A stretch of DNA of 64,000 bases from Obrimoposthia wandeli (lineage: Eukaryota): the NCBI GenBank assembly GCA_977020255.1, contig CDROCS010003840.1, forward strand, positions 62,001 to 126,000, written 5' to 3'. Positions 14,039-23,471 of the stretch are shown here, piece by piece. Both the position numbers and the translations under genes were made by a program. The stretch's first letter is position 1; each line of letters begins with the position of its first letter. Under the pieces are notes generated by a model, which was not told the DNA's origin, did no database searches, and was given only the letters and a program-made list of their open reading frames with translations.

Positions 14039-14638
14039 TATTGTTTTCCTGCGAATTATGTTCTTATAGTGCCAAAATACACTATAAAACAGTATAAAAG
14101 GAATACCCGACAGGTAAAAATAAGCTTAAACAATATTTTGTACAATATAACTCTGTTCAAAGAAGTGTGATCAACTGCTTTATGCTTTGCCTTTTAGATA
14201 GAAACACCATTTAAAGCAATAAAGTAAAAACTCCAACCTGTGCGTTTTGGTGATTTACCATATTTCTTACTGAAAAATCATCATTTTAAATTAATATACT
14301 GTTGGAAGTAGCAATTACTGCAGAGCTTATTTCCCTTTGCCTTATCAAAACAGCGGTTGAGATCTATTTTTTATTATATTGAAGCAAAGTATGGTCGCAA
14401 AAAAAAGCTGTCTGAGAAGGTGTACATTTTGTAAGGATATAATGCTTAATAAGCGCTCGATATTTATATTGAGTAGTTACATCAATAGTCAGCGCGTGAT
14501 TAGTGGGGTAGAATACCGATCATTATGAGGTTATATATTTAACTATCATAAGGGTAGGATTGTGTGCTCAATGATAGGCACATTTTACAATCAGCCAGGG
14601 ATGACCGTTATGGTGTAATAGAGCTGAGTGAGGTTACC

Positions 14639-15976
14639 TTGACCGCATTACAAACTGCAGTTGATCTTTTAATTCAGAAAATTCAACAATCTTCAGATAC
14701 AACCCAACGATTAATGGTATCGCTGGATTTACCAGCCAATACTGATCTAATTGATTGGATGGACTCCCAACCTCTATTTCCCAAATTTTATTGGCAATCT
14801 CGAGATAGCCGTGAAGAGGTTGTAGCATTAGGACAAGTCAAAACATTCACCGACCCTATGGTGGCTGAGAAAGTGCTTGCTGATGATCAGCGTATTTGGG
14901 GAGGGCGTTCATTTGATGGACGGACTAACCGCAACCGTCGTTGCCTTTCTTCTTTTTTCTTTTTACCTCAACTTGAAGTTATCCGGATGGATGGTGATTG
15001 GCAGCTTGCTGTTAATTTGTCGACGGATAAAGAAAAGATGGTAGAAACATTAAATAAAATTACATCAACGGCAACTGAAGTAACAGAGATCAATAGTCAT
15101 ATTATTGCTCGAACACATGCCCCAGACTATTCGGGCTGGTCATCAATGATCGCTCAGGCATTAGATTCTATTTCGAATAAAGTGTTTGAGAAAGTAGTAC
15201 TCGCACGTCGTACAACCCTGACCTTAGATACACCTGTTGCTCCTGCGCAATTATTAAAGGCGAGCCGTAAAAGTAACAACAATAGCTTTCACTTTATGAT
15301 GGCGCTTGATGCTAAGCATTGTTTTGTCGGTTCAACGCCCGAGCGATTATTTCATCGTCATGATCGTGATTTAAAAACGGAAGCCTTGGCGGGAACAATT
15401 GGACGAGGTTTCGATGCCTCTGAAGATCACCGTTTAGCGAATTGGCTAATGGCTGATAATAAAAACGGCTACGAAAACCGTTTAGTGGTTGATGATATTG
15501 TGAATCGCTTAACGCCTTGTTGTGAGTCAATGAACGTAGCGCAAACACCAGAATTGATTCGTTTACGTAAAGTGCAGCATTTAAAGCGTGGCATTGATGC
15601 TCAGCTTCATGAGCAAGTATACAGCGCTGATTTACTTGATAACCTTCAACCTACTGCCGCCATTGCAGGTTTACCTCGAGATAAAGCATTAGCATTTATT
15701 AGTGAACATGAACCGTTTGCGCGTGGTTGGTATAGCGGTGCTGTCGGCTTTCTAAGCCGTCAACGTAGCGAGTTCTGTGTGGCAATTCGCAGTGCGTTAA
15801 TGATGGGTGATGAAGTACATTTGTTTGCAGGGGCTGGCATTGTGCCCGGTTCGACAGCAGACAGTGAGTGGAAAGAGTTGGATCGAAAAACAGCAACGTT
15901 ATGCAGTTTATTAGAATCAGATAGGCCTGATGAACGATCTAATGATAGGTCTGAGCTGGAGCGAAAAATAGCATGA
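14639..15976 (+). CDS. menF: Menaquinone-specific isochorismate synthase
   Basis: KFYWQSR, KVVLAR, GSTPERL, EALAGT, RGWYSGAVG, AGAGIV; TTG start at 14639 with GAGG SD (start uncertain). Confidence 0.93.
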   Translation: MTALQTAVDLLIQKIQQSSDTTQRLMVSLDLPANTDLIDWMDSQPLFPKFYWQSRDSREEVVALGQVKTFTDPMVAEKVLADDQRIWGGRSFDGRTNRNRRCLSSFFFLPQLEVIRMDGDWQLAVNLSTDKEKMVETLNKITSTATEVTEINSHIIARTHAPDYSGWSSMIAQALDSISNKVFEKVVLARRTTLTLDTPVAPAQLLKASRKSNNNSFHFMMALDAKHCFVGSTPERLFHRHDRDLKTEALAGTIGRGFDASEDHRLANWLMADNKNGYENRLVVDDIVNRLTPCCESMNVAQTPELIRLRKVQHLKRGIDAQLHEQVYSADLLDNLQPTAAIAGLPRDKALAFISEHEPFARGWYSGAVGFLSRQRSEFCVAIRSALMMGDEVHLFAGAGIVPGSTADSEWKELDRKTATLCSLLESDRPDERSNDRSELERKIA

Positions 15977-17703
15977 CGATAGGAACTACGGCCTCTCAGG
16001 TCAATTATCGTGCAGCATTAAATACGCTTTGGGCGAGTTTAATGCTGGAAGAGCTAGTGCGAATGGGAGTGAAACATGTTTGTATCGCCCCTGGATCTCG
16101 TTCAACGCCGTTGACGTTAGCTGCCGTCGCCAATAATAAGCTTACTATTCACACGCATTTTGATGAGCGTGGCTTAGGTTTTCTTGCGCTTGGTATTGCG
16201 AAAGCGTCGCAAGAACCTGTTGCTGTCGTTGTCACATCAGGTACGGCGGTTGCCAATTTATTGCCTGCCGTGGCAGAAGCCGGTCTTACTGGTGAAAAGT
16301 TGGTATTGCTAACGTCAGATAGACCGGTTGACTTGATTCAATGCGGGGCTAATCAGGCCATTGTTCAGAATGGTATTTTTTCACAGCATGTGACTGCTTT
16401 TCATGATATTCCCTCTCCGACGCTGGATATTTCCCCCGCTTGGCTATTGTCGACCATCGATGAAGCCATGCAACAGCAACTGCGGCAAGGTCGCGCGGTG
16501 CACTTCAATTGTCATTACCCTGAACCGCTATATGGGGATGATGTCGATTTTTCTGATTATCTTGCCCCAGTTTCTGAGTGGCAAGGTGATGAATTACCCT
16601 ATGTATCACACCATCAAGCTTTTACTCCTCAAATCGCAATAGATAAACAGCAATGGCAATCATTAACCCAACGTAAAGGGGTCGTGATTGTAGGGCGTTT
16701 AGCACCAGAAGCACTGGGTCAAGTCACTTTGTTAGCAGAAAAACTGGGGTGGCCATTATTGCTGGATCCACAAGCTGGTGGCACTAGTGGATGGGCTGGG
16801 TTTGATATTTGGCTGCAAAATGCCGATTGTCAGGTATTTCTTCAGCAAGCGGATACGGTTATTCAGTTTGGTGCTCGTATTGTTTCTAAACGTTTATTGC
16901 AGTTTATTGCGACGAGTAATATTGAACATTATTGGTTGATTGATCCCCTTGCGGGGCGTTTAGATTCAACCCATCGTCGTAGTTCGCGCATTCAAGCCCC
17001 AATTGATGAGTGGGCAACGTGTGCGTTGCACCTTACTGAAAACAGTGTGCATGCTGGTTGGGCTATGCCTTTACAAGTCGCCTCTGAACGTTATTTTGAG
17101 CTGCTGGGCGAGTATTCAGAACAACTGACCGAGTTATCTTTAGCGGCAAATTTAGGGGCATGGTTACCTGATAAAACCGAATTGTTTTTGGGGAATAGCT
17201 TAATAATCCGTTTATTGGATATGGTGGGTAAATTACCCTCAACGGCGACATTCGCCAATCGTGGGGCGTCAGGCATTGATGGTTTGATAGCGACCATCGC
17301 TGGCGTTAATAAAGCCAGACAAGCGCCAATGCTTGGGTTATTGGGTGATACATCACTGCTATACGATCTTAATTCATTAGCATTACTGCGTGATGTGTCT
17401 CAACCCGTTGTGATCATCGTAACGAATAATGATGGTGGTGGCATTTTCGATTTATTGCCGGTGCCAGAACTTCAACGTGATGCGCTCTATCGTATGCCGC
17501 ATGGGCTTGAATTTAGCCACGCAGCGGCAATGTTTGGTTTGGCTTATCACTGCCCAGAATCATTGCCTCAAGCCGAAGAACAATGCCTGTACGCATTAAC
17601 CCAGCCACAAACTACGATCATTGAAATTAAAACCCCGGCAGGTGAAGCGGGTGAAATGATAAAAGCGTTATTTGGGAAGGTTAAAAATGCGGCTTTACTC
17701 TGA
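15973..17703 (+). CDS. menD: SEPHCHC synthase
   Basis: CIAPGSRSTPL, HFDERGLGF, TSGTAVANL, NRGASGIDG, ThDP motif GDTSLLYD...NNDGGGIF. Confidence 0.96.
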   Translation: MTIGTTASQVNYRAALNTLWASLMLEELVRMGVKHVCIAPGSRSTPLTLAAVANNKLTIHTHFDERGLGFLALGIAKASQEPVAVVVTSGTAVANLLPAVAEAGLTGEKLVLLTSDRPVDLIQCGANQAIVQNGIFSQHVTAFHDIPSPTLDISPAWLLSTIDEAMQQQLRQGRAVHFNCHYPEPLYGDDVDFSDYLAPVSEWQGDELPYVSHHQAFTPQIAIDKQQWQSLTQRKGVVIVGRLAPEALGQVTLLAEKLGWPLLLDPQAGGTSGWAGFDIWLQNADCQVFLQQADTVIQFGARIVSKRLLQFIATSNIEHYWLIDPLAGRLDSTHRRSSRIQAPIDEWATCALHLTENSVHAGWAMPLQVASERYFELLGEYSEQLTELSLAANLGAWLPDKTELFLGNSLIIRLLDMVGKLPSTATFANRGASGIDGLIATIAGVNKARQAPMLGLLGDTSLLYDLNSLALLRDVSQPVVIIVTNNDGGGIFDLLPVPELQRDALYRMPHGLEFSHAAAMFGLAYHCPESLPQAEEQCLYALTQPQTTIIEIKTPAGEAGEMIKALFGKVKNAALL

Positions 17704-18484
17704 AAGTTTTGGTGTATTGAGCAATGAGTCACAGCCCACATTAGTGTTTCTACATGGTTTATTAGGGTCGGGACAAGATTGGCGTCATGTGGTGAATACA
17801 TTATCGTCAGGGCACCCTTGTATTACGATCGATTTACCTGGGCACGGTAAAAGCCAGATGGTGCAAGCCATCGACTTTGCTCACGTTAATCAGCTTATTC
17901 TTCAAACCTTGTTTCATCGTAATATTCAACAGTATGTGTTGATTGGCTACTCAATGGGCGCACGATTAGCGATGTATCATGCGGCATCCATGCATTCTAA
18001 TAAAAAAACACCACAATTAATGGGTGTTGTTATAGAAGGTGGGCATTTTGGGTTGCCACAAGTAGAATGTGCGGCAAGGTTTGCAAATGATCAAAAGTGG
18101 GCGCAGCGTTTTACATATGAGCCACTTAGCCTCGTTTTATCTGACTGGTATCAACAAGCGGTATTTTCGTCACTGAATCATGACCAAAGACAAAGCTTAG
18201 TACTGAAACGCAGTGGTAATCTTGCCTCTGGTGTTGCACGTATGCTGCTGGCTACATCATTAGCGAAGCAACCACAATTATTACAAACGATGGAAGCATT
18301 AATTTTGCCGACCATTTATGTGTGTGGCGAGCGAGACAAAAAATTTAAACGTCTGGTCGAAGACACCCAGTTACAGTATCAGGTGATCGCATCGGCGGGG
18401 CATAATGTGCATGTTGAACAACCTTATGCATTCAGCATGGCAATCAATAATTTTGTAAAACAGATTGGAATTAATCATGGCTAA
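17687..18484 (+). CDS. menH: SHCHC synthase
   Basis: LVFLHGLLGSG, IDLPGHG, nucleophile GYSMGAR, AGHNVH. Confidence 0.93.
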   Translation: MRLYSESFGVLSNESQPTLVFLHGLLGSGQDWRHVVNTLSSGHPCITIDLPGHGKSQMVQAIDFAHVNQLILQTLFHRNIQQYVLIGYSMGARLAMYHAASMHSNKKTPQLMGVVIEGGHFGLPQVECAARFANDQKWAQRFTYEPLSLVLSDWYQQAVFSSLNHDQRQSLVLKRSGNLASGVARMLLATSLAKQPQLLQTMEALILPTIYVCGERDKKFKRLVEDTQLQYQVIASAGHNVHVEQPYAFSMAINNFVKQIGINHG

Positions 18485-19484
18485 AACTGCAGTTCTGACA
18501 GAAGAAGATATGCGTAGCGCGAAATTATATCAATACCAACTGCCTATGGATTCAGGTGTTATTCTTCGCACTCAACGCCTAGCAACACGTGAAGGTTGGA
18601 TCGTTGAATTACGTGATGGCGATAAAGTCGGTTTCGGTGAGATTGCACCTTTACCTGAGTTTAGTCATGAAACTGTCGAGCAAGCAGGCGAGCAAGCAAA
18701 ACAGTTACTTGAAAGTTGGATTCAAGGTGAAACGATTGACTTAGCACAAGCGCTGCCGTCGGTTGCGTTTGGTTTGAGCATGGCAATGTTAGAGCTAGCT
18801 TCAAGGTTGCCAGCGGAAGGGAATTATTCAGTCGCGCCGTTATGCTCTGGCGATCCTGATGATTTGATCATTCGCTTGAATGAAATGTCAGGCGAGAAAG
18901 TCGCAAAAATTAAAGTCGGTATGTATGAAGCGGTGCGTGATGGCATCGTGGTAAACATGTTTATTGAAGTGATTCCTGAAGTACGTTTACGCTTAGATGC
19001 GAACCGTAAGTGGACGCCGATTAAAGCCCAACAGTTTGCGAAATATGTAAAACCTGAACACCGTGCTGGTATCGCGTTCTTAGAAGAACCTTGCAAGACA
19101 CCAGAAGACAGCTTAGCTTTTTCTAAAGAAACAGGAATCAACATCGCATGGGATGAAACCGTGCGTGATGAAGGTTTTGAAGTAAAAGCTGAACCTGGCG
19201 TGGTTGCTATTATCATCAAACCAACGTTAGTGGGCTCTGTGCAGCGTTGTATGGATTTAATTAAGCAAGCGCATGCGATAGGGCTTACGGCTGTTATTAG
19301 CTCTAGTATGGAGTCTAGCCTTGGCTTAAACCAGCTAGCGCGCTTTGCTGAATGGCAAACACCTGGCGTTATTCCTGGTTTAGACACAATGCAATTATTT
19401 AAGGCGCAACTTGAAACATCGTGGCCTGATTGTGATTTACCGAAAACAGCATTGTCTGATTTAGAGGTGGTATGGCAGAAGTAA
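18477..19484 (+). CDS. menC: o-succinylbenzoate synthase, with an 11-aa N-terminal leader resembling the MenB N-terminus
   Basis: MRSAKLYQYQLPMDSGVILR from 18510, KIKVG, LRLDANRKW, FLEEP, WDE, KPT; preceded in frame by MAKTAVLTEED. Confidence 0.94.
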   Translation: MAKTAVLTEEDMRSAKLYQYQLPMDSGVILRTQRLATREGWIVELRDGDKVGFGEIAPLPEFSHETVEQAGEQAKQLLESWIQGETIDLAQALPSVAFGLSMAMLELASRLPAEGNYSVAPLCSGDPDDLIIRLNEMSGEKVAKIKVGMYEAVRDGIVVNMFIEVIPEVRLRLDANRKWTPIKAQQFAKYVKPEHRAGIAFLEEPCKTPEDSLAFSKETGINIAWDETVRDEGFEVKAEPGVVAIIIKPTLVGSVQRCMDLIKQAHAIGLTAVISSSMESSLGLNQLARFAEWQTPGVIPGLDTMQLFKAQLETSWPDCDLPKTALSDLEVVWQK

Positions 19485-20908
19485 CTCAATACTTCGCCAC
19501 ATGGCCTTGGCAACATTGGGCAGAGGAGCGACCGTCAGCGGTCGCTCTTTCTTTTGGTGCGCAATGTGTCGATGGTGAATGTATTGGCGAGCAACGATTC
19601 AGCTGGGTGGAAATGAGCCATCGCGTTGATGAGTATGCACAAGGCCTAATTGAACAAGGCGTCAAGCGCGATCAAATGGTTGCGGTTGTTGCGCCTAATT
19701 CAATTCAAGTTATATGGCTTATTTTAGCAACGTTACGCATTGGTGCCCGTTATGTTGGGCTAAACCCGAAAAATACAGAAATAGAATTAAATGAACAGCT
19801 TGATCGATTAAAAAATGATTATATTTGGTATCCAGCACGTACCGTTCATCAATTCACAACAGGTAAACGCCTGCACTTATTGCAGCCAGAACAACCGCGT
19901 ATTGTGCCCGTTACTTGGCAACAAACCCGACCAGCAACCCTAACACTGACATCTGGCTCAACCGGAGCACCCAAAGCAGCCGTTCATACAGCCGAAAATC
20001 ATCTTGCCAGTGCCGATGGGTTACTGGAACAGATGGATTTTGGCAGTGATGACAGTTGGTTGTTATCTTTACCGTTGTTTCATATTTCAGGGCTCGCTAT
20101 TGTTTGGCGTTGGTTATACCGCGGTGCCAAGTTGGTGGTTACTGAACCCGCTTGTTTTGAACATGCACTAACGACGGTGACACACGCTTCTCTCGTGCCG
20201 ACGCAACTTCAACGTTTACTCGCCTCGAAGCATGGTGACGGCAATGGCACTTTAGTATTGAAACAAGTGTTATTGGGTGGCGCGGCCATTCCTGTTAGCT
20301 TAACAGATGCCGCTGAACGTATCGGTATTAGCTGCTGGTGTGGTTACGGTATGACAGAGATGAGCTCGACTGTTACAGCAAAAAAAGCAGATGCGAGTGG
20401 GGGCGTCGGTATTGTTTTAGGCAACCGTCACTTTATGATTAAAGACGGTGAAGTGTATGTGCAAGGAACGACCTTATGTTTGGGGTATTATCGTAATAAA
20501 ATGATATTCCCAGCCAGTGACGGAGAATGGTTTGCCACCCGTGATTTAGGCGAATGGCGAGACAATGAACTACACATATTGGGACGAGCTGATAACATGT
20601 TTATTTCTGGTGGCGAGAATATTCAACCAGAAGACATCGAAAAAGTATTAGTGACCCATGCGGCTGTTAAGCAAGCCTTTGTACTGCCAATTGATGATAC
20701 AGAATTTGGGCAACGCCCAGTAGCAATCGTCGAGATTGAGTCAGAATTATCAAGTGATGTTATTGAGTCGCTAGAAAGCTATATGGCAGATCATATTGTG
20801 AGATTTAAGCGCCCAGTTCGTTACCTAGCATTGCCAAAGGAATTAGCGACATCGGGTATTAAAGTGTCACGTAAGCAGTTAAGCGAGTGGCTAGCGCTAC
20901 AGGTTTAA
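19472..20908 (+). CDS. menE: o-succinylbenzoate-CoA ligase
   Basis: TLTSGSTGAPK, GYGMTE, WFATRDLG, GRADNMFISGGENIQPE. Confidence 0.94.
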   Translation: MAEVTQYFATWPWQHWAEERPSAVALSFGAQCVDGECIGEQRFSWVEMSHRVDEYAQGLIEQGVKRDQMVAVVAPNSIQVIWLILATLRIGARYVGLNPKNTEIELNEQLDRLKNDYIWYPARTVHQFTTGKRLHLLQPEQPRIVPVTWQQTRPATLTLTSGSTGAPKAAVHTAENHLASADGLLEQMDFGSDDSWLLSLPLFHISGLAIVWRWLYRGAKLVVTEPACFEHALTTVTHASLVPTQLQRLLASKHGDGNGTLVLKQVLLGGAAIPVSLTDAAERIGISCWCGYGMTEMSSTVTAKKADASGGVGIVLGNRHFMIKDGEVYVQGTTLCLGYYRNKMIFPASDGEWFATRDLGEWRDNELHILGRADNMFISGGENIQPEDIEKVLVTHAAVKQAFVLPIDDTEFGQRPVAIVEIESELSSDVIESLESYMADHIVRFKRPVRYLALPKELATSGIKVSRKQLSEWLALQV

Positions 20909-20984: not shown

Positions 20985-22865
20985 CTATTGATTATTGCCA
21001 CGTAAGGCAACGATTCGTTCACGCAGTTCAGAGCTATGAATATTGTCTGATGGTGAAATCGGTTCACCTGCCACTACGGTAACTTTTGACCAAAAACGTT
21101 TTGGCATCTTCAATAAAGCGCAGCCTCGTTCACGGCTGAAAAGACTGCCCCATAACCCTTGTAAAGCCACGGGAATCACGGGTACAGAAGACCGCTTAAG
21201 GATGATATCGATGCCACGTAAGAATGGGCCTATTTCACCGTCGTAGGTGAGTTGCCCTTCAGGGAAGATACAAACAATGTCGCCATTGTCTAAATATTGG
21301 GTAACTTGCGAAAAGGCTCTATGCACTGAACGACGATCATTAGGATCAACAGGAACAACCTTGCAAGCTTTACAAAATACCGAGATAAACGGCAGGCTAG
21401 AAATGTCTTTATCCATTAGAAAGCGAATAGGGCGAGGGTAAGCTCCCGCTAATAATAACGCATCCATGTAACTGACATGATTGCAGACAATCAGAGCACC
21501 GCCTTGCAGAGGAATATTCTCTAAATCTTTATGTTTCACTCGATACATGGTGTGTGTAACGAGCCACACCAGAAAGCGCCAGAAAAAATCGGGTACTTGT
21601 ACGTATAAGTAAATAACAACAATAAAGTTAGTGATTGATAGAAACAGAAAGAACTGTGGAATACTAAATTCTAATACTGACAAAAAGACAATCGATAGAA
21701 TGGCACTCGCCACCATGAATAGCGCATTCCAGATATTATTCGCAGCAATGATTTGTGCGCGCTCATCTTCTTTGGCTCGGCTTTGCATCATGGCGTAAAG
21801 AGGCACAATGAACACCCCACCAGAAACACCTAACAGCATTAATGCGATGAAAATATGGAAAAGCTCAGGGTGAGCAATGAACTCAATAAAACTGTTTGAT
21901 ACTGGCACCACATCTGGTGAAGCAAAGAAAAGAATGGCACTGAATAAAGTAATACCAAAACTACCCAGAGGGACAATACCGGGTTCAATTCGGTGGCCAG
22001 ACAGACGGTCACATAATAGTGAGCCTGTAGCTATACCAATTGAAAATAATGCGAGTAAGAAAGAAACAGAAGCCGCGCCACCACCAAGGTGGATTTTAGC
22101 AAAATTAGGGAATTGTGTTAGGTAACATGCCCCTAAAAACCAAAACCAACTAATGCCTAACACACATTGAAAAACGGTTTTGTCTTTCTTGGCTATTGCT
22201 AATGTATGGCGTGTTTGTTTAATCGGTTGCCATTTGAATTCAAGATTAGGGTTGCTCGGTTTTGCTTCGGGTATTTTACGGGACGTGGCATACCCTAAAA
22301 CAGCAAAAGAAACGACACTAATTGCTGCAATTAAGGGAGCATCTTGCTGGTTGGCTATCACGCCAGCTAACAACGTACCCAGTAGAATCGCCAGAAAAGT
22401 ACCAGTCTCGACCAATGCATTACCTGAAACGAGTTCTTCTTTTCTTAAATGTTGGGGTAAAAGTGCATATTTGGCTGGACCAAAAAATGCCGACTGGGTT
22501 CCCATCAAAAATAATAGAATTAGCAGCATCATGTAACTTTCGGTGAGAAAGGCGATAGCCGCTAAAGCCATAATAATAATTTCAGCAAACTTTACGATAC
22601 GCATAATCTGCGCTTTATCGTATTTATCGGCTAATACACCTGCCGAGGCTGAAAAAAGGAAAAAAGGGAGAATGAATAAGCCAGCCGCGAGGTTAATGAT
22701 CAGATCTGAATCGAGGGGTAATGTACCAGGAGCCGAAAATGCAATAAGAATGAGCAAGATATTCTTATAGACATTATCGTTAAAAGCCCCAAGAGCCTGC
22801 GTAAGAAAATAGGGTAGAAACCGCTGCTTAGTTAAAAGGCGCGATTGGGGCTGAACACTCATCAA
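20985..22865 (-). CDS. MFS transporter fused to a 1-acyl-glycerol-3-phosphate acyltransferase domain (LplT/Aas-like)
   Basis: TQALGAFNDNVYK, LADKYDK, FGPAKYALLP MFS motifs; C-terminal PlsC motifs NHVSYMD and FPEG. Confidence 0.88.
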   Translation of the reverse strand: MMSVQPQSRLLTKQRFLPYFLTQALGAFNDNVYKNILLILIAFSAPGTLPLDSDLIINLAAGLFILPFFLFSASAGVLADKYDKAQIMRIVKFAEIIIMALAAIAFLTESYMMLLILLFLMGTQSAFFGPAKYALLPQHLRKEELVSGNALVETGTFLAILLGTLLAGVIANQQDAPLIAAISVVSFAVLGYATSRKIPEAKPSNPNLEFKWQPIKQTRHTLAIAKKDKTVFQCVLGISWFWFLGACYLTQFPNFAKIHLGGGAASVSFLLALFSIGIATGSLLCDRLSGHRIEPGIVPLGSFGITLFSAILFFASPDVVPVSNSFIEFIAHPELFHIFIALMLLGVSGGVFIVPLYAMMQSRAKEDERAQIIAANNIWNALFMVASAILSIVFLSVLEFSIPQFFLFLSITNFIVVIYLYVQVPDFFWRFLVWLVTHTMYRVKHKDLENIPLQGGALIVCNHVSYMDALLLAGAYPRPIRFLMDKDISSLPFISVFCKACKVVPVDPNDRRSVHRAFSQVTQYLDNGDIVCIFPEGQLTYDGEIGPFLRGIDIILKRSSVPVIPVALQGLWGSLFSRERGCALLKMPKRFWSKVTVVAGEPISPSDNIHSSELRERIVALRGNNQ

Positions 22866-22874
22866 ATACTCCGC

Positions 22875-23471
22875 TTATGCGTGCCAAGCGTTTAAATAGG
22901 TGTTTAATAAGTTGTCTATTAGTGCTTTAGCGTCAACCGGAACGGAAGTAAATAATTTGTCATCAACACTTAATAACGTAATACCATGAACACCCGCCCA
23001 TAAAACGCGGCTTGCTTCTAAGATATCGGCATCCGATTTCTGAGGCGTGATTTGATGAATTAAGGTTTCAAGCATACTTGTCATGCTATTAATTCGTTCA
23101 GATTGCCATTCAGGAAGTTCATCGCCATTCATAGTGTGTTGGAATATTAACTGCCAGCGGTAAGGGTGAGCAGCGGCAAATTCTTGATAGCAATAAGCGA
23201 GTTTACGCAGTGCATCTTCAGGTGAAGTTGCAGAGTTCATCTGCGCTTCGGCTTCTGCGAATAACTCATCAAGCGTTTGTGCTACAGCATGAAGCAGTAG
23301 TAGGTTGTAGTTACCAAATACATTTACTAATGTGCTTGGTACATAGCCGATCATGCCTGCTACTTTTCGTAAACTTAGTTCGTGATGTGGGTGTTCGTTT
23401 AAAAAATTCTTCACTTGCTCTAGTGTCATGCTTACCAACTCTTCGCGAGTGTGGTCATTTCGTCTTGCCAT
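22875..23471 (-). CDS. TetR/AcrR-family regulator (WHG-type C-terminal domain)
   Basis: HTH LSLRKVAGMIGYVPSTLVNVF; HPYRWQLIF and LWAGVHG; 9 bp upstream of the MFS gene. Confidence 0.9.
   Translation of the reverse strand: MARRNDHTREELVSMTLEQVKNFLNEHPHHELSLRKVAGMIGYVPSTLVNVFGNYNLLLLHAVAQTLDELFAEAEAQMNSATSPEDALRKLAYCYQEFAAAHPYRWQLIFQHTMNGDELPEWQSERINSMTSMLETLIHQITPQKSDADILEASRVLWAGVHGITLLSVDDKLFTSVPVDAKALIDNLLNTYLNAWHA

What the first reader, a model, noticed from the sequence alone, without database searches (positions are those of the whole stretch)
18465..18512. menB is missing from the menaquinone operon; a MenB-like N-terminal stub is fused in frame to MenC
Seen: the order is menF-menD-menH-menC-menE with no naphthoate synthase ORF in the window. 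The menH stop overlaps an ATG at 18477 that opens MAKTAVLTEED, followed in frame at 18510 by the typical MenC start MRSAKLYQYQLPMDSG. Known: the canonical order is menFDHBCE, and MenB (DHNA-CoA synthase) is required to make the naphthoquinone ring. From memory (verify), Vibrionaceae MenB begins MA[K/R]TVG[I/L][S/T]EEE, resembling this stub. Inference: a clean deletion from menB codon ~11 to the menC start, possibly at GAAGAAGA microhomology, that keeps menH-menC translational coupling. menB is then either relocated or replaced by an unknown enzyme, or MK/DMK synthesis is broken although the other five genes are intact.
Basis: partly seen in the sequence, partly recalled or inferred. Interest (0 to 1): 0.75.

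Follow-up and report, generated by a model that had tools for sequence, protein, structure and literature searches.

The report
menB deletion scar fused to menC
In this Photobacterium the vitamin-K2 (menaquinone) operon has lost its menB gene through a small repeat-mediated deletion that left the first ten menB codons as a leader on the next enzyme, MenC. The same gene was lost several separate times in the genus, so the missing enzyme activity must be supplied from somewhere I could not locate.

Summary
Window 14564-20908 encodes menF-menD-menH-menC-menE, and no MenB is encoded anywhere in the 64 kb. The menH stop (18482-84) overlaps an ATG at 18477. That ATG opens MAKTAVLTEED in frame with the canonical MenC Met at 18510.

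The deletion reading is supported. The first 31 nt of the leader match the 5' end of menB in Photobacterium species that keep menB at 25-28 of 31 positions. Those species carry ACTGAAGA/GAAGA both at menB codons 8-10 and just upstream of menC, and a deletion between these repeats reproduces the window sequence. The deletion also removed menC's own ribosome-binding site. Two sister species have ATT at the old MenC start, so MenC is now translated from the former menB start.

The lipolyticum clade carries a different junction. On a men-operon tree, losses alone require 5-6 independent menB deletions.

The remaining men genes are under purifying selection (dN/dS 0.05-0.13), so the pathway is probably alive and DHNA-CoA synthase activity must come from elsewhere. 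I could not find that gene. The menB-like fragments I could trace in the run that holds the window came from other bacteria.

Interest is moderate. It would be high only if no MenB homologue exists in the genome.

The parts
14564..15976 (+). menF, isochorismate synthase (GTG start as listed; true start not tested)
   Evidence: NCBIfam TIGR00543, 349 bits, above its cut-off of 225
15973..17703 (+). menD, SEPHCHC synthase
   Evidence: NCBIfam TIGR00173, 456 bits
17672..18484 (+). menH, SHCHC synthase. Its TAA stop at 18482-18484 overlaps the next start codon.
   Evidence: NCBIfam NF008340, 347 bits; sequence
18456..18479 (+). Former menB translation-initiation region (AGATTGGAATTAATC + ATG), now used for menC
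   Evidence: The same AGATTGGAAT(A/T)AATC-ATG precedes menB in P. alginatilyticum, proteolyticum and marinum. It has a weak SD (-3.3 kcal/mol), identical to that of menB in the menB+ species.
18477..18509 (+). menB remnant: menB codons 1-10 plus the junction codon, read as the MenC leader MAKTAVLTEED
   Evidence: 25-28/31 nt identical to the menB 5' ends of Photobacterium menB+ operons. Residues 1-7 are disordered in the AlphaFold model.
18501..18508 (+). GAAGAAGA: deletion junction (microhomology)
   Evidence: menB+ relatives carry ACTGAAGAAGA at menB codons 8-11 and ACTGAAGA 3 nt upstream of the menC ATG. Joining these two reproduces the window sequence.
18477..19484 (+). menC, o-succinylbenzoate synthase, 335 aa when read from the ex-menB ATG. 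The ancestral Met is at 18510.
   Evidence: NCBIfam NF003473, 482 bits. P. indicum and P. frigidiphilum have ATT at the ancestral Met. The native menC SD has been deleted.
19472..20908 (+). menE, o-succinylbenzoate-CoA ligase
   Evidence: NCBIfam NF006539, 608 bits

Best explanation
An ancestor of the P. profundum/indicum/frigidiphilum clade had the canonical menFDHBCE operon. Shown by comparison: a deletion of about 860 bp between two short direct repeats removed menB. One repeat (ACTGAAGAAGA) lay at menB codons 8-11 and the other (ACTGAAGA) lay 3 nt upstream of the menC ATG. The deletion also removed menC's own Shine-Dalgarno sequence. What remains is the menB start region, coupled to the menH stop, and ten menB codons fused in frame to menC. 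Inferred from sequence: menC is now translated from the former menB start codon, giving MenC an 11-residue disordered leader with no function of its own. Inferred from selection and phylogeny: the loss was tolerated because DHNA-CoA synthase activity is provided from elsewhere in the genome. The source is most likely a second, possibly divergent, menB homologue. The in-operon copy was lost independently in at least five other Photobacterium/Thaumasiovibrio lineages, while menF, D, H, C and E stay intact and constrained.
For: The gene order is menF-D-H-C-E and no MenB is encoded in the window. Of 80 related genomes, 43 have menB in a gap of about 890 bp between menH and menC, and 37 have a gap of only -4 to 120 bp. 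The leader DNA is homologous to the menB 5' end, and the repeats lie at both endpoints. In the lipolyticum clade the junction is different: menB codons 1-5 are joined to the menB stop and spacer. Neither junction can be derived from the other. On the MenF+D+C+E tree, menB+ and menB- clades are interleaved, needing at least 4 changes and 5-6 if only losses are allowed. SD strength upstream of the old menC ATG is -1.0 to -1.9 kcal/mol in the profundum clade, against -4.3 to -11.2 in menB+ species and -8.3 in the lipolyticum clade. L001 and L003 have ATT at the old start. dN/dS of the window against L001-L003 is 0.05-0.07 for MenF, about 0.10 for MenD, 0.07-0.13 for MenC and about 0.10 for MenE. 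MenC (PBPRA2622) was detected in the P. profundum SS9 proteome (PMC3669370). Precedent: in Shewanella putrefaciens CN32, menC, D, E and H are co-transcribed without menB, and menB is a separate, required gene (PMC13688807).
Against: No menB could be shown elsewhere in this genome or in any menB-less Photobacterium. Two word-index protein searches with a Photobacterium MenB listed many Vibrionaceae MenB clusters. None was named for P. profundum, damselae, phosphoreum or angustum. Every one of the 10 clusters I looked up lay inside a men operon of another taxon. A public run with a close relative at about 9x depth (X3) laid only the junction contig on a menH-menB-menC reference and no menB piece. 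The menB-like fragments I could trace in the best-holding run belong to a flavobacterium and to a Moritella-like organism. Use of the upstream ATG is inferred, not measured. NCBI annotates the P. profundum MenC from the inner ATG (324 aa).
Confidence: 0.8

Rival explanations
1. No MenB homologue exists in these genomes. A non-homologous or very distant enzyme closes the naphthoate ring, or OSB-CoA is used for something other than menaquinone.
For: No Vibrionaceae-type MenB could be attributed to any menB-less Photobacterium. Run X3 shows the operon junction but no menB-like contig at 80% likeness, although pieces of even a 52%-identical flavobacterial menB were laid from run X19. The SS9 proteome table lists MenC but no 'naphtho...' protein.
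Against: All of these are absences from capped, ranked or truncated listings. The contig tool itself says that a hole proves nothing. No MenB-independent route from OSB-CoA to DHNA is known (established pathway knowledge). A divergent MenB, such as a type I xenologue, would escape every test used here.
Confidence: 0.1
2. The classical pathway is dead in this clade, and the remaining men genes are relics.
For: A required step is missing from the operon.
Against: All five genes are full-length in all 37 menB-less loci. dN/dS is 0.05-0.13 for four of them, accumulated since the deletion. The catalytic K-x-K, D, E, D, K positions of MenC are invariant in the alignment. MenC protein has been detected in SS9.
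Confidence: 0.05
3. Artefact, or an unrelated leader. Either an assembly collapse removed menB, or MAKTAVLTEED is an ordinary MenC extension or a chance upstream ORF.
For: The leader is short and weakly conserved at the protein level: MAKTAVLTEED, MAKTVVLTEED, MAKTVDLTEDV and MAKTVVLTEEY.
Against: The same junction is present in three other species' assemblies and in contigs of two independent runs. The leader is absent from MenC in every menB+ operon. 25-28 of 31 nt are identical to the menB 5' ends, at the homologous position immediately after menH.
Confidence: 0.02

Closest known systems
Classical menFDHBCE operon of E. coli and most Vibrionaceae (Aliivibrio, Enterovibrio and Vibrio loci here)
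   Same: It has the same five genes in the same order, with the same flanks: an aminotransferase upstream and TM2/Tim44-like genes downstream. The menH-menB start region is conserved.
   Different: menB is reduced to its first ten codons, and menC has taken over the menB start.
Shewanella men gene organisation (S. putrefaciens CN32, PMC13688807)
   Same: menC, menD, menE and menH form one transcript without menB. menB lies elsewhere and is required for menaquinone-dependent phenotypes.
   Different: No menB remnant is described there. In Photobacterium the separate menB has not been found, and the loss is recent enough to leave a datable scar.
The independent menB deletion in the P. lipolyticum/sagamiensis clade
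   Same: The in-operon menB is lost, leaving an in-frame stub that begins with the menB ATG (MARVIRQAET-M).
   Different: The junction lies between menB codon 5/6 (GTAGG) and the menB stop (TAAGG). The menC SD (UAAGGCAGG, -8.3 kcal/mol) survives, so menC probably still starts at its own ATG.

Membership tests
o-Succinylbenzoate synthase MenC (enolase superfamily; NCBIfam NF003473/TIGR01927) | Whole-protein match above the curated cut-off | tested here: met
   482 bits against a cut-off of 236, and 365 bits against 131. The match covers residues 12-334.
o-Succinylbenzoate synthase MenC (enolase superfamily; NCBIfam NF003473/TIGR01927) | Catalytic Lys-x-Lys, three metal-binding carboxylates and the second Lys (E. 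coli K131/K133, D161, E190, D213, K235; residue numbers from my own knowledge) | tested here: met
   K144, K146, D174, E203, D226 and K248 are invariant in a 23-sequence alignment that includes Proteus and Vibrionaceae MenC.
o-Succinylbenzoate synthase MenC (enolase superfamily; NCBIfam NF003473/TIGR01927) | Capping domain plus TIM-barrel fold | tested here: inconclusive
   The AlphaFold model has mean pLDDT 91.5 and pTM 0.90. Residues 1-7 of the leader are below 50. No fold search was run.
DHNA-CoA synthase MenB (crotonase superfamily, PF00378) | A crotonase-fold domain of about 285 aa with the MenB core motifs | tested here: not met
   Only the first 10 codons remain at 18477-18506. tblastn of MenB against the window gives a best E of 0.035, in an unrelated S49 peptidase.
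Canonical menFDHBCE operon | menB between menH and menC | tested here: not met
   The menH stop overlaps the leader ATG, and the gap between the MenH and MenC matches is 26-29 bp in the profundum and lipolyticum clades, against about 890 bp in menB+ genomes.
Complete classical menaquinone pathway in this organism | A functional DHNA-CoA synthase somewhere in the genome | not testable with these tools
   Only 64 kb of the genome is available. The protein-index and read-based attempts were uninformative.

The most novel reading that the evidence does not exclude
Most Photobacterium species, including the strong TMAO reducers P. phosphoreum and P. profundum, have no MenB homologue at all. They would close the naphthoate ring with an undescribed enzyme, and that would explain why the in-operon menB could be discarded five or six times.
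Probability: 0.1. Interest if true: 0.85.

Novelty: new variant of a known kind. Interest (0 to 1): 0.4.

Why it matters
This is a clean, datable case of operon remodelling. A microhomology deletion removed an essential-pathway gene. The downstream gene survived by capturing the deleted gene's start codon and its translational coupling to menH, and a relic leader peptide remains. The practical consequences are threefold:

- MenC start sites are annotated inconsistently in this clade (324 against 335 aa).
- Metabolic reconstructions will flag a pathway hole at menB.
- The repeated loss across the genus points to a second, still unidentified source of DHNA-CoA synthase activity in Photobacterium.

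If that source turns out not to be a MenB homologue, it would be a new enzyme in a well-studied vitamin pathway.

Tried and rejected
1. Public reads. I laid four runs on the P. alginatilyticum menH-menB-menC region. Run X19, which holds 98% of the window's words, does contain menB-like fragments. Their loose ends translate to a flavobacterial MenB, found again on low-GC metagenome contigs L083-L087. One 30-mer matches exactly a Moritella-like menB that lies inside a men operon, L101/L102. Two further fragments in that run were not traced. X19 is therefore a mixed sample, and the traced fragments say nothing about the Photobacterium.

2. Protein index. I made two MenB searches, one full-length and one restricted to N-terminal residues 1-75, and two cluster listings on MenB. 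The only Photobacterium names found were from menB+ species (alginatilyticum, marinum, swingsii, jeanii, sanguinicancri, sp. 1_MG-2023).

3. Genomic context of 10 unnamed or suspect MenB clusters. All lie in men operons of other organisms.

4. Representative search at 50% clustering. It returned fragments and fusions without names and was of no use for this question.

5. tblastn against PLSDB plasmids with a type II and a type I MenB, and a viral-contig scan. Neither gave a Photobacterium hit.

6. Literature. No paper links Photobacterium with menB or naphthoate synthase. The SS9 supplementary tables are truncated or partial. Collins and Jones 1981 is not held.

7. Exact look-ups of the 335-aa and 324-aa MenC and of MenE of the window found nothing, so this strain's proteins are not in the collection.

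8. I considered a Shewanella-like type I MenB xenologue as the replacement. It could not be tested because I had no referenced sequence of that type from a gammaproteobacterium, and the third costly protein search was left unused for that reason.

Full report
**Observation.** Window 18300-18700 shows the menH frame ending in TAA at 18482-18484. An ATG at 18477 overlaps it (ATGGCTAA). From that ATG the frame reads MAKTAVLTEED and runs on without a stop into ATG 18510, MRSAKLYQYQLPMDSG. NCBIfam models identify the five consecutive ORFs at 14564-20908 as MenF, MenD, MenH, MenC and MenE, all far above the curated cut-offs except the E. coli-specific MenF model. The MenC profile begins to match at residue 12 of the long form, which is the Met at 18510. 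A Photobacterium MenB, taken from locus L007, finds nothing in any frame of the 64-kb window. The best E-value is 0.035, inside an S49 peptidase.

**What the relatives show.** One scan of the species-representative genome collection with MenC returned 80 loci with 6-kb flanks. The window belongs to the Photobacterium profundum/indicum/frigidiphilum clade, with 94-96% MenC identity. I mapped the window's Men proteins on all loci and the L007 MenB on all loci.

- 43 loci have menB in a gap of about 890 bp between menH and menC. These are Proteus, Vibrio, Aliivibrio, Enterovibrio, Parasalinivibrio and nine Photobacterium.
- 37 loci have a gap of -4 to 120 bp and no MenB within 6 kb on either side. 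These are 35 Photobacterium and two Thaumasiovibrio.

The menB-less operon is thus a widespread natural state and not a peculiarity of this assembly. Contigs of two public runs (X19, X3) skip 898 bases of a menB+ reference at exactly this place, with 49 other letters between.

**Origin of the leader.** MenB of the menB+ Photobacterium starts MARTVGLTEEE. At the DNA level these operons read ...AGATTGGAATAAATC ATGGCAAGAACCGTAGGTCTGACTGAAGAAGAACTG... at the menH/menB boundary. At the menB/menC boundary they read ...AACCCA TAA GGCGAGTACTGAAGAT ATGCGTAGT.... The window reads ...AGATTGGAATTAATC ATGGCTAAAACTGCAGTTCTGACAGAAGAAGAT ATGCGTAGC....

Its first 31 nt are identical to the menB 5' ends at 25-28 of 31 positions. 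The binomial P against 25% chance identity is about 1e-10 to 1e-14. The rest is the last few bases before menC. The repeat ACTGAAGA (GAAGA in the register that fits exactly) occurs at both endpoints in P. alginatilyticum and P. sp. OFAV2-7. A deletion between the two copies gives the window sequence apart from later point changes. MenC in every menB+ operon starts at MRSAKLY, without a leader.

**How menC is now expressed.** The deletion removed the Shine-Dalgarno sequence that serves menC in menB+ species (UAAGGCGAG or UAAGGGGAGG). Its duplex energy with the 16S 3' end is -4.3 to -11.2 kcal/mol. Upstream of the old ATG the profundum clade has only -1.0 to -1.9 kcal/mol. The former menB start keeps its unchanged upstream region (-3.3 kcal/mol, the same as for menB itself), and it now overlaps the menH stop. 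P. indicum and P. frigidiphilum have ATT in place of the old MenC ATG. The next in-frame ATG lies beyond nearly invariant N-terminal residues.

I therefore infer that MenC is translated from ATG 18477 and carries the 11-residue relic. This is inferred, not measured. NCBI annotates the P. profundum protein from the inner ATG (324 aa), while another gene caller chose 335 aa. An AlphaFold model built on 23 sequences is confident for the MenC body (mean pLDDT 91.5) and gives pLDDT below 50 for residues 1-7. The leader sequence drifts among the four genomes. It looks like a tolerated, functionless tag. The MenC catalytic positions are invariant.

**More than one deletion.** The sister clade (P. lipolyticum, P. 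sagamiensis and a MAG) has a different junction, ATGG(C/T)nAGA(R)(Y)(Y)RTA|AGGCAGGCTGAGACT ATG. This is menB codons 1-5 joined to the menB stop and spacer, at GTAGG/TAAGG. It keeps spacer sequence that the window lacks, and it lacks menB codons 6-10 that the window keeps. Neither junction can be derived from the other.

- The ganghwense/rosenbergii/sanctipauli clade carries an AGATGGAATT-like motif, resembling the region upstream of menB, directly before the menC ATG.
- The damselae/phosphoreum/angustum clade has a 46-99 bp spacer ending in a TAAGG-type SD.
- Photobacterium sp. MCCC 1A19761 and Thaumasiovibrio differ again.

On a tree of concatenated MenF+MenD+MenC+MenE (FastTree, 81 rows), menB+ and menB- clades are interleaved. 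At least 4 changes are needed. If re-insertion at the identical site is excluded, 5-6 independent losses are needed. In-operon Photobacterium MenB sequences group together, though weakly supported, which fits vertical descent rather than re-acquisition.

**Is the pathway alive?** All five remaining genes are full-length in all menB-less loci. Between the window and its three closest relatives, which share the deletion, NG86 dN/dS is as follows:

| Gene | dN/dS |
|---|---|
| MenF | 0.05-0.07 |
| MenD | 0.09-0.11 |
| MenC | 0.07-0.13 |
| MenE | 0.10-0.12 |
| MenH | 0.28-0.42 |

MenC of P. profundum SS9 (PBPRA2622) was detected by mass spectrometry (PMC3669370). MenA and UbiE are annotated and expressed in SS9 (PMC3505737). 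These results argue against a decaying pathway. Since no route from OSB-CoA to DHNA without MenB is known, a DHNA-CoA synthase must be encoded elsewhere. The repeated loss of the operon copy suggests that this second source already existed in an early Photobacterium. Shewanella putrefaciens CN32 is a precedent: menC, D, E and H are co-transcribed without menB, and a separate menB is required (PMC13688807).

- Reads. The run that holds 98% of the window's words (X19) contains menB-like fragments. Their loose ends belong to a flavobacterial MenB, recovered on low-GC metagenome contigs. One 30-mer belongs to a Moritella-like menB that sits in its own men operon and matches exactly. X19 is a mixed sample, so the traced fragments cannot be assigned to the Photobacterium, and two others were not traced. 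Run X3 holds a close relative at about 9x and laid only the junction contig. That hints that no Vibrionaceae-type menB is present, but the tool warns that holes prove nothing.
- Protein index. Two searches and two cluster listings gave Photobacterium names only for menB+ species. Ten context look-ups all landed in men operons of other taxa.
- The representative search, the plasmid searches and the viral scan gave nothing useful, and neither did the literature.

The trans-acting enzyme may be a divergent MenB, for instance a type I xenologue, the kind that the S. baltica MenB placement in PMC3914697 suggests, or part of a second men cluster. Less likely, it is something new.

**Verdict.** The feature is a microhomology deletion scar with capture of the menB start by menC, and it is one of several independent menB losses in the genus. 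I found no paper describing it. It is a new variant of a known kind of operon. Its wider interest depends on what replaces MenB, and a single whole-genome search would settle that.

Noticed in passing
window 17672-18484 (menH) compared with L001-L003: menH has a much lower dS (0.10-0.15) than its neighbours (0.21-0.44) and a higher dN/dS (0.28-0.42). This could mean recent recombination across menH, or relaxed constraint.
   Followed up: no
window 20985-23471, minus strand: A fused MFS transporter-acyltransferase (626 aa, LplT/Aas-like) and a TetR-family regulator lie between menE and the TM2-domain gene. In other Vibrionaceae loci (L088, L091) menE is followed directly by the TM2 gene.
   Followed up: partly
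L001:6034 and L003:6034 (P. indicum, P. frigidiphilum): The ancestral MenC start codon is ATT. Any annotation that starts MenC there would need a non-canonical start.
   Followed up: partly
L114/L115 (P. profundum, PYOD01000008.1 and a Logan contig): The same DNA is annotated with MenC of 324 aa by NCBI and of 335 aa by another gene caller, so start-site annotation in this clade is inconsistent.
   Followed up: yes
L064:5139-6001 (Enterovibrio coralii menB): The MenB match is split into two pieces in different frames at about residue 92. This is a possible frameshift or sequencing error in an otherwise canonical operon.
   Followed up: no
L110:5220-6989 (Vibrionaceae MAG, GCA_028748625.1): No gene is called where menD should lie, between menF and menH, and in L111 no menE is called after menC. 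This may be a decaying men operon in a symbiont-like genome.
   Followed up: no
public run X19 (holds 98% of the window's sampled words): The run also contains flavobacterial and Moritella-like menB sequences, and the Photobacterium operon contig has a word depth of only about 12. The sample behind this genome is therefore a mixture and not a pure culture.
   Followed up: partly
L106-L109 (Logan contigs carrying P0089): An unnamed organism has menA next to menF-D-H-B, then an M48 peptidase gene inserted between menB and menC-menE. This is another variant of the operon.
   Followed up: no
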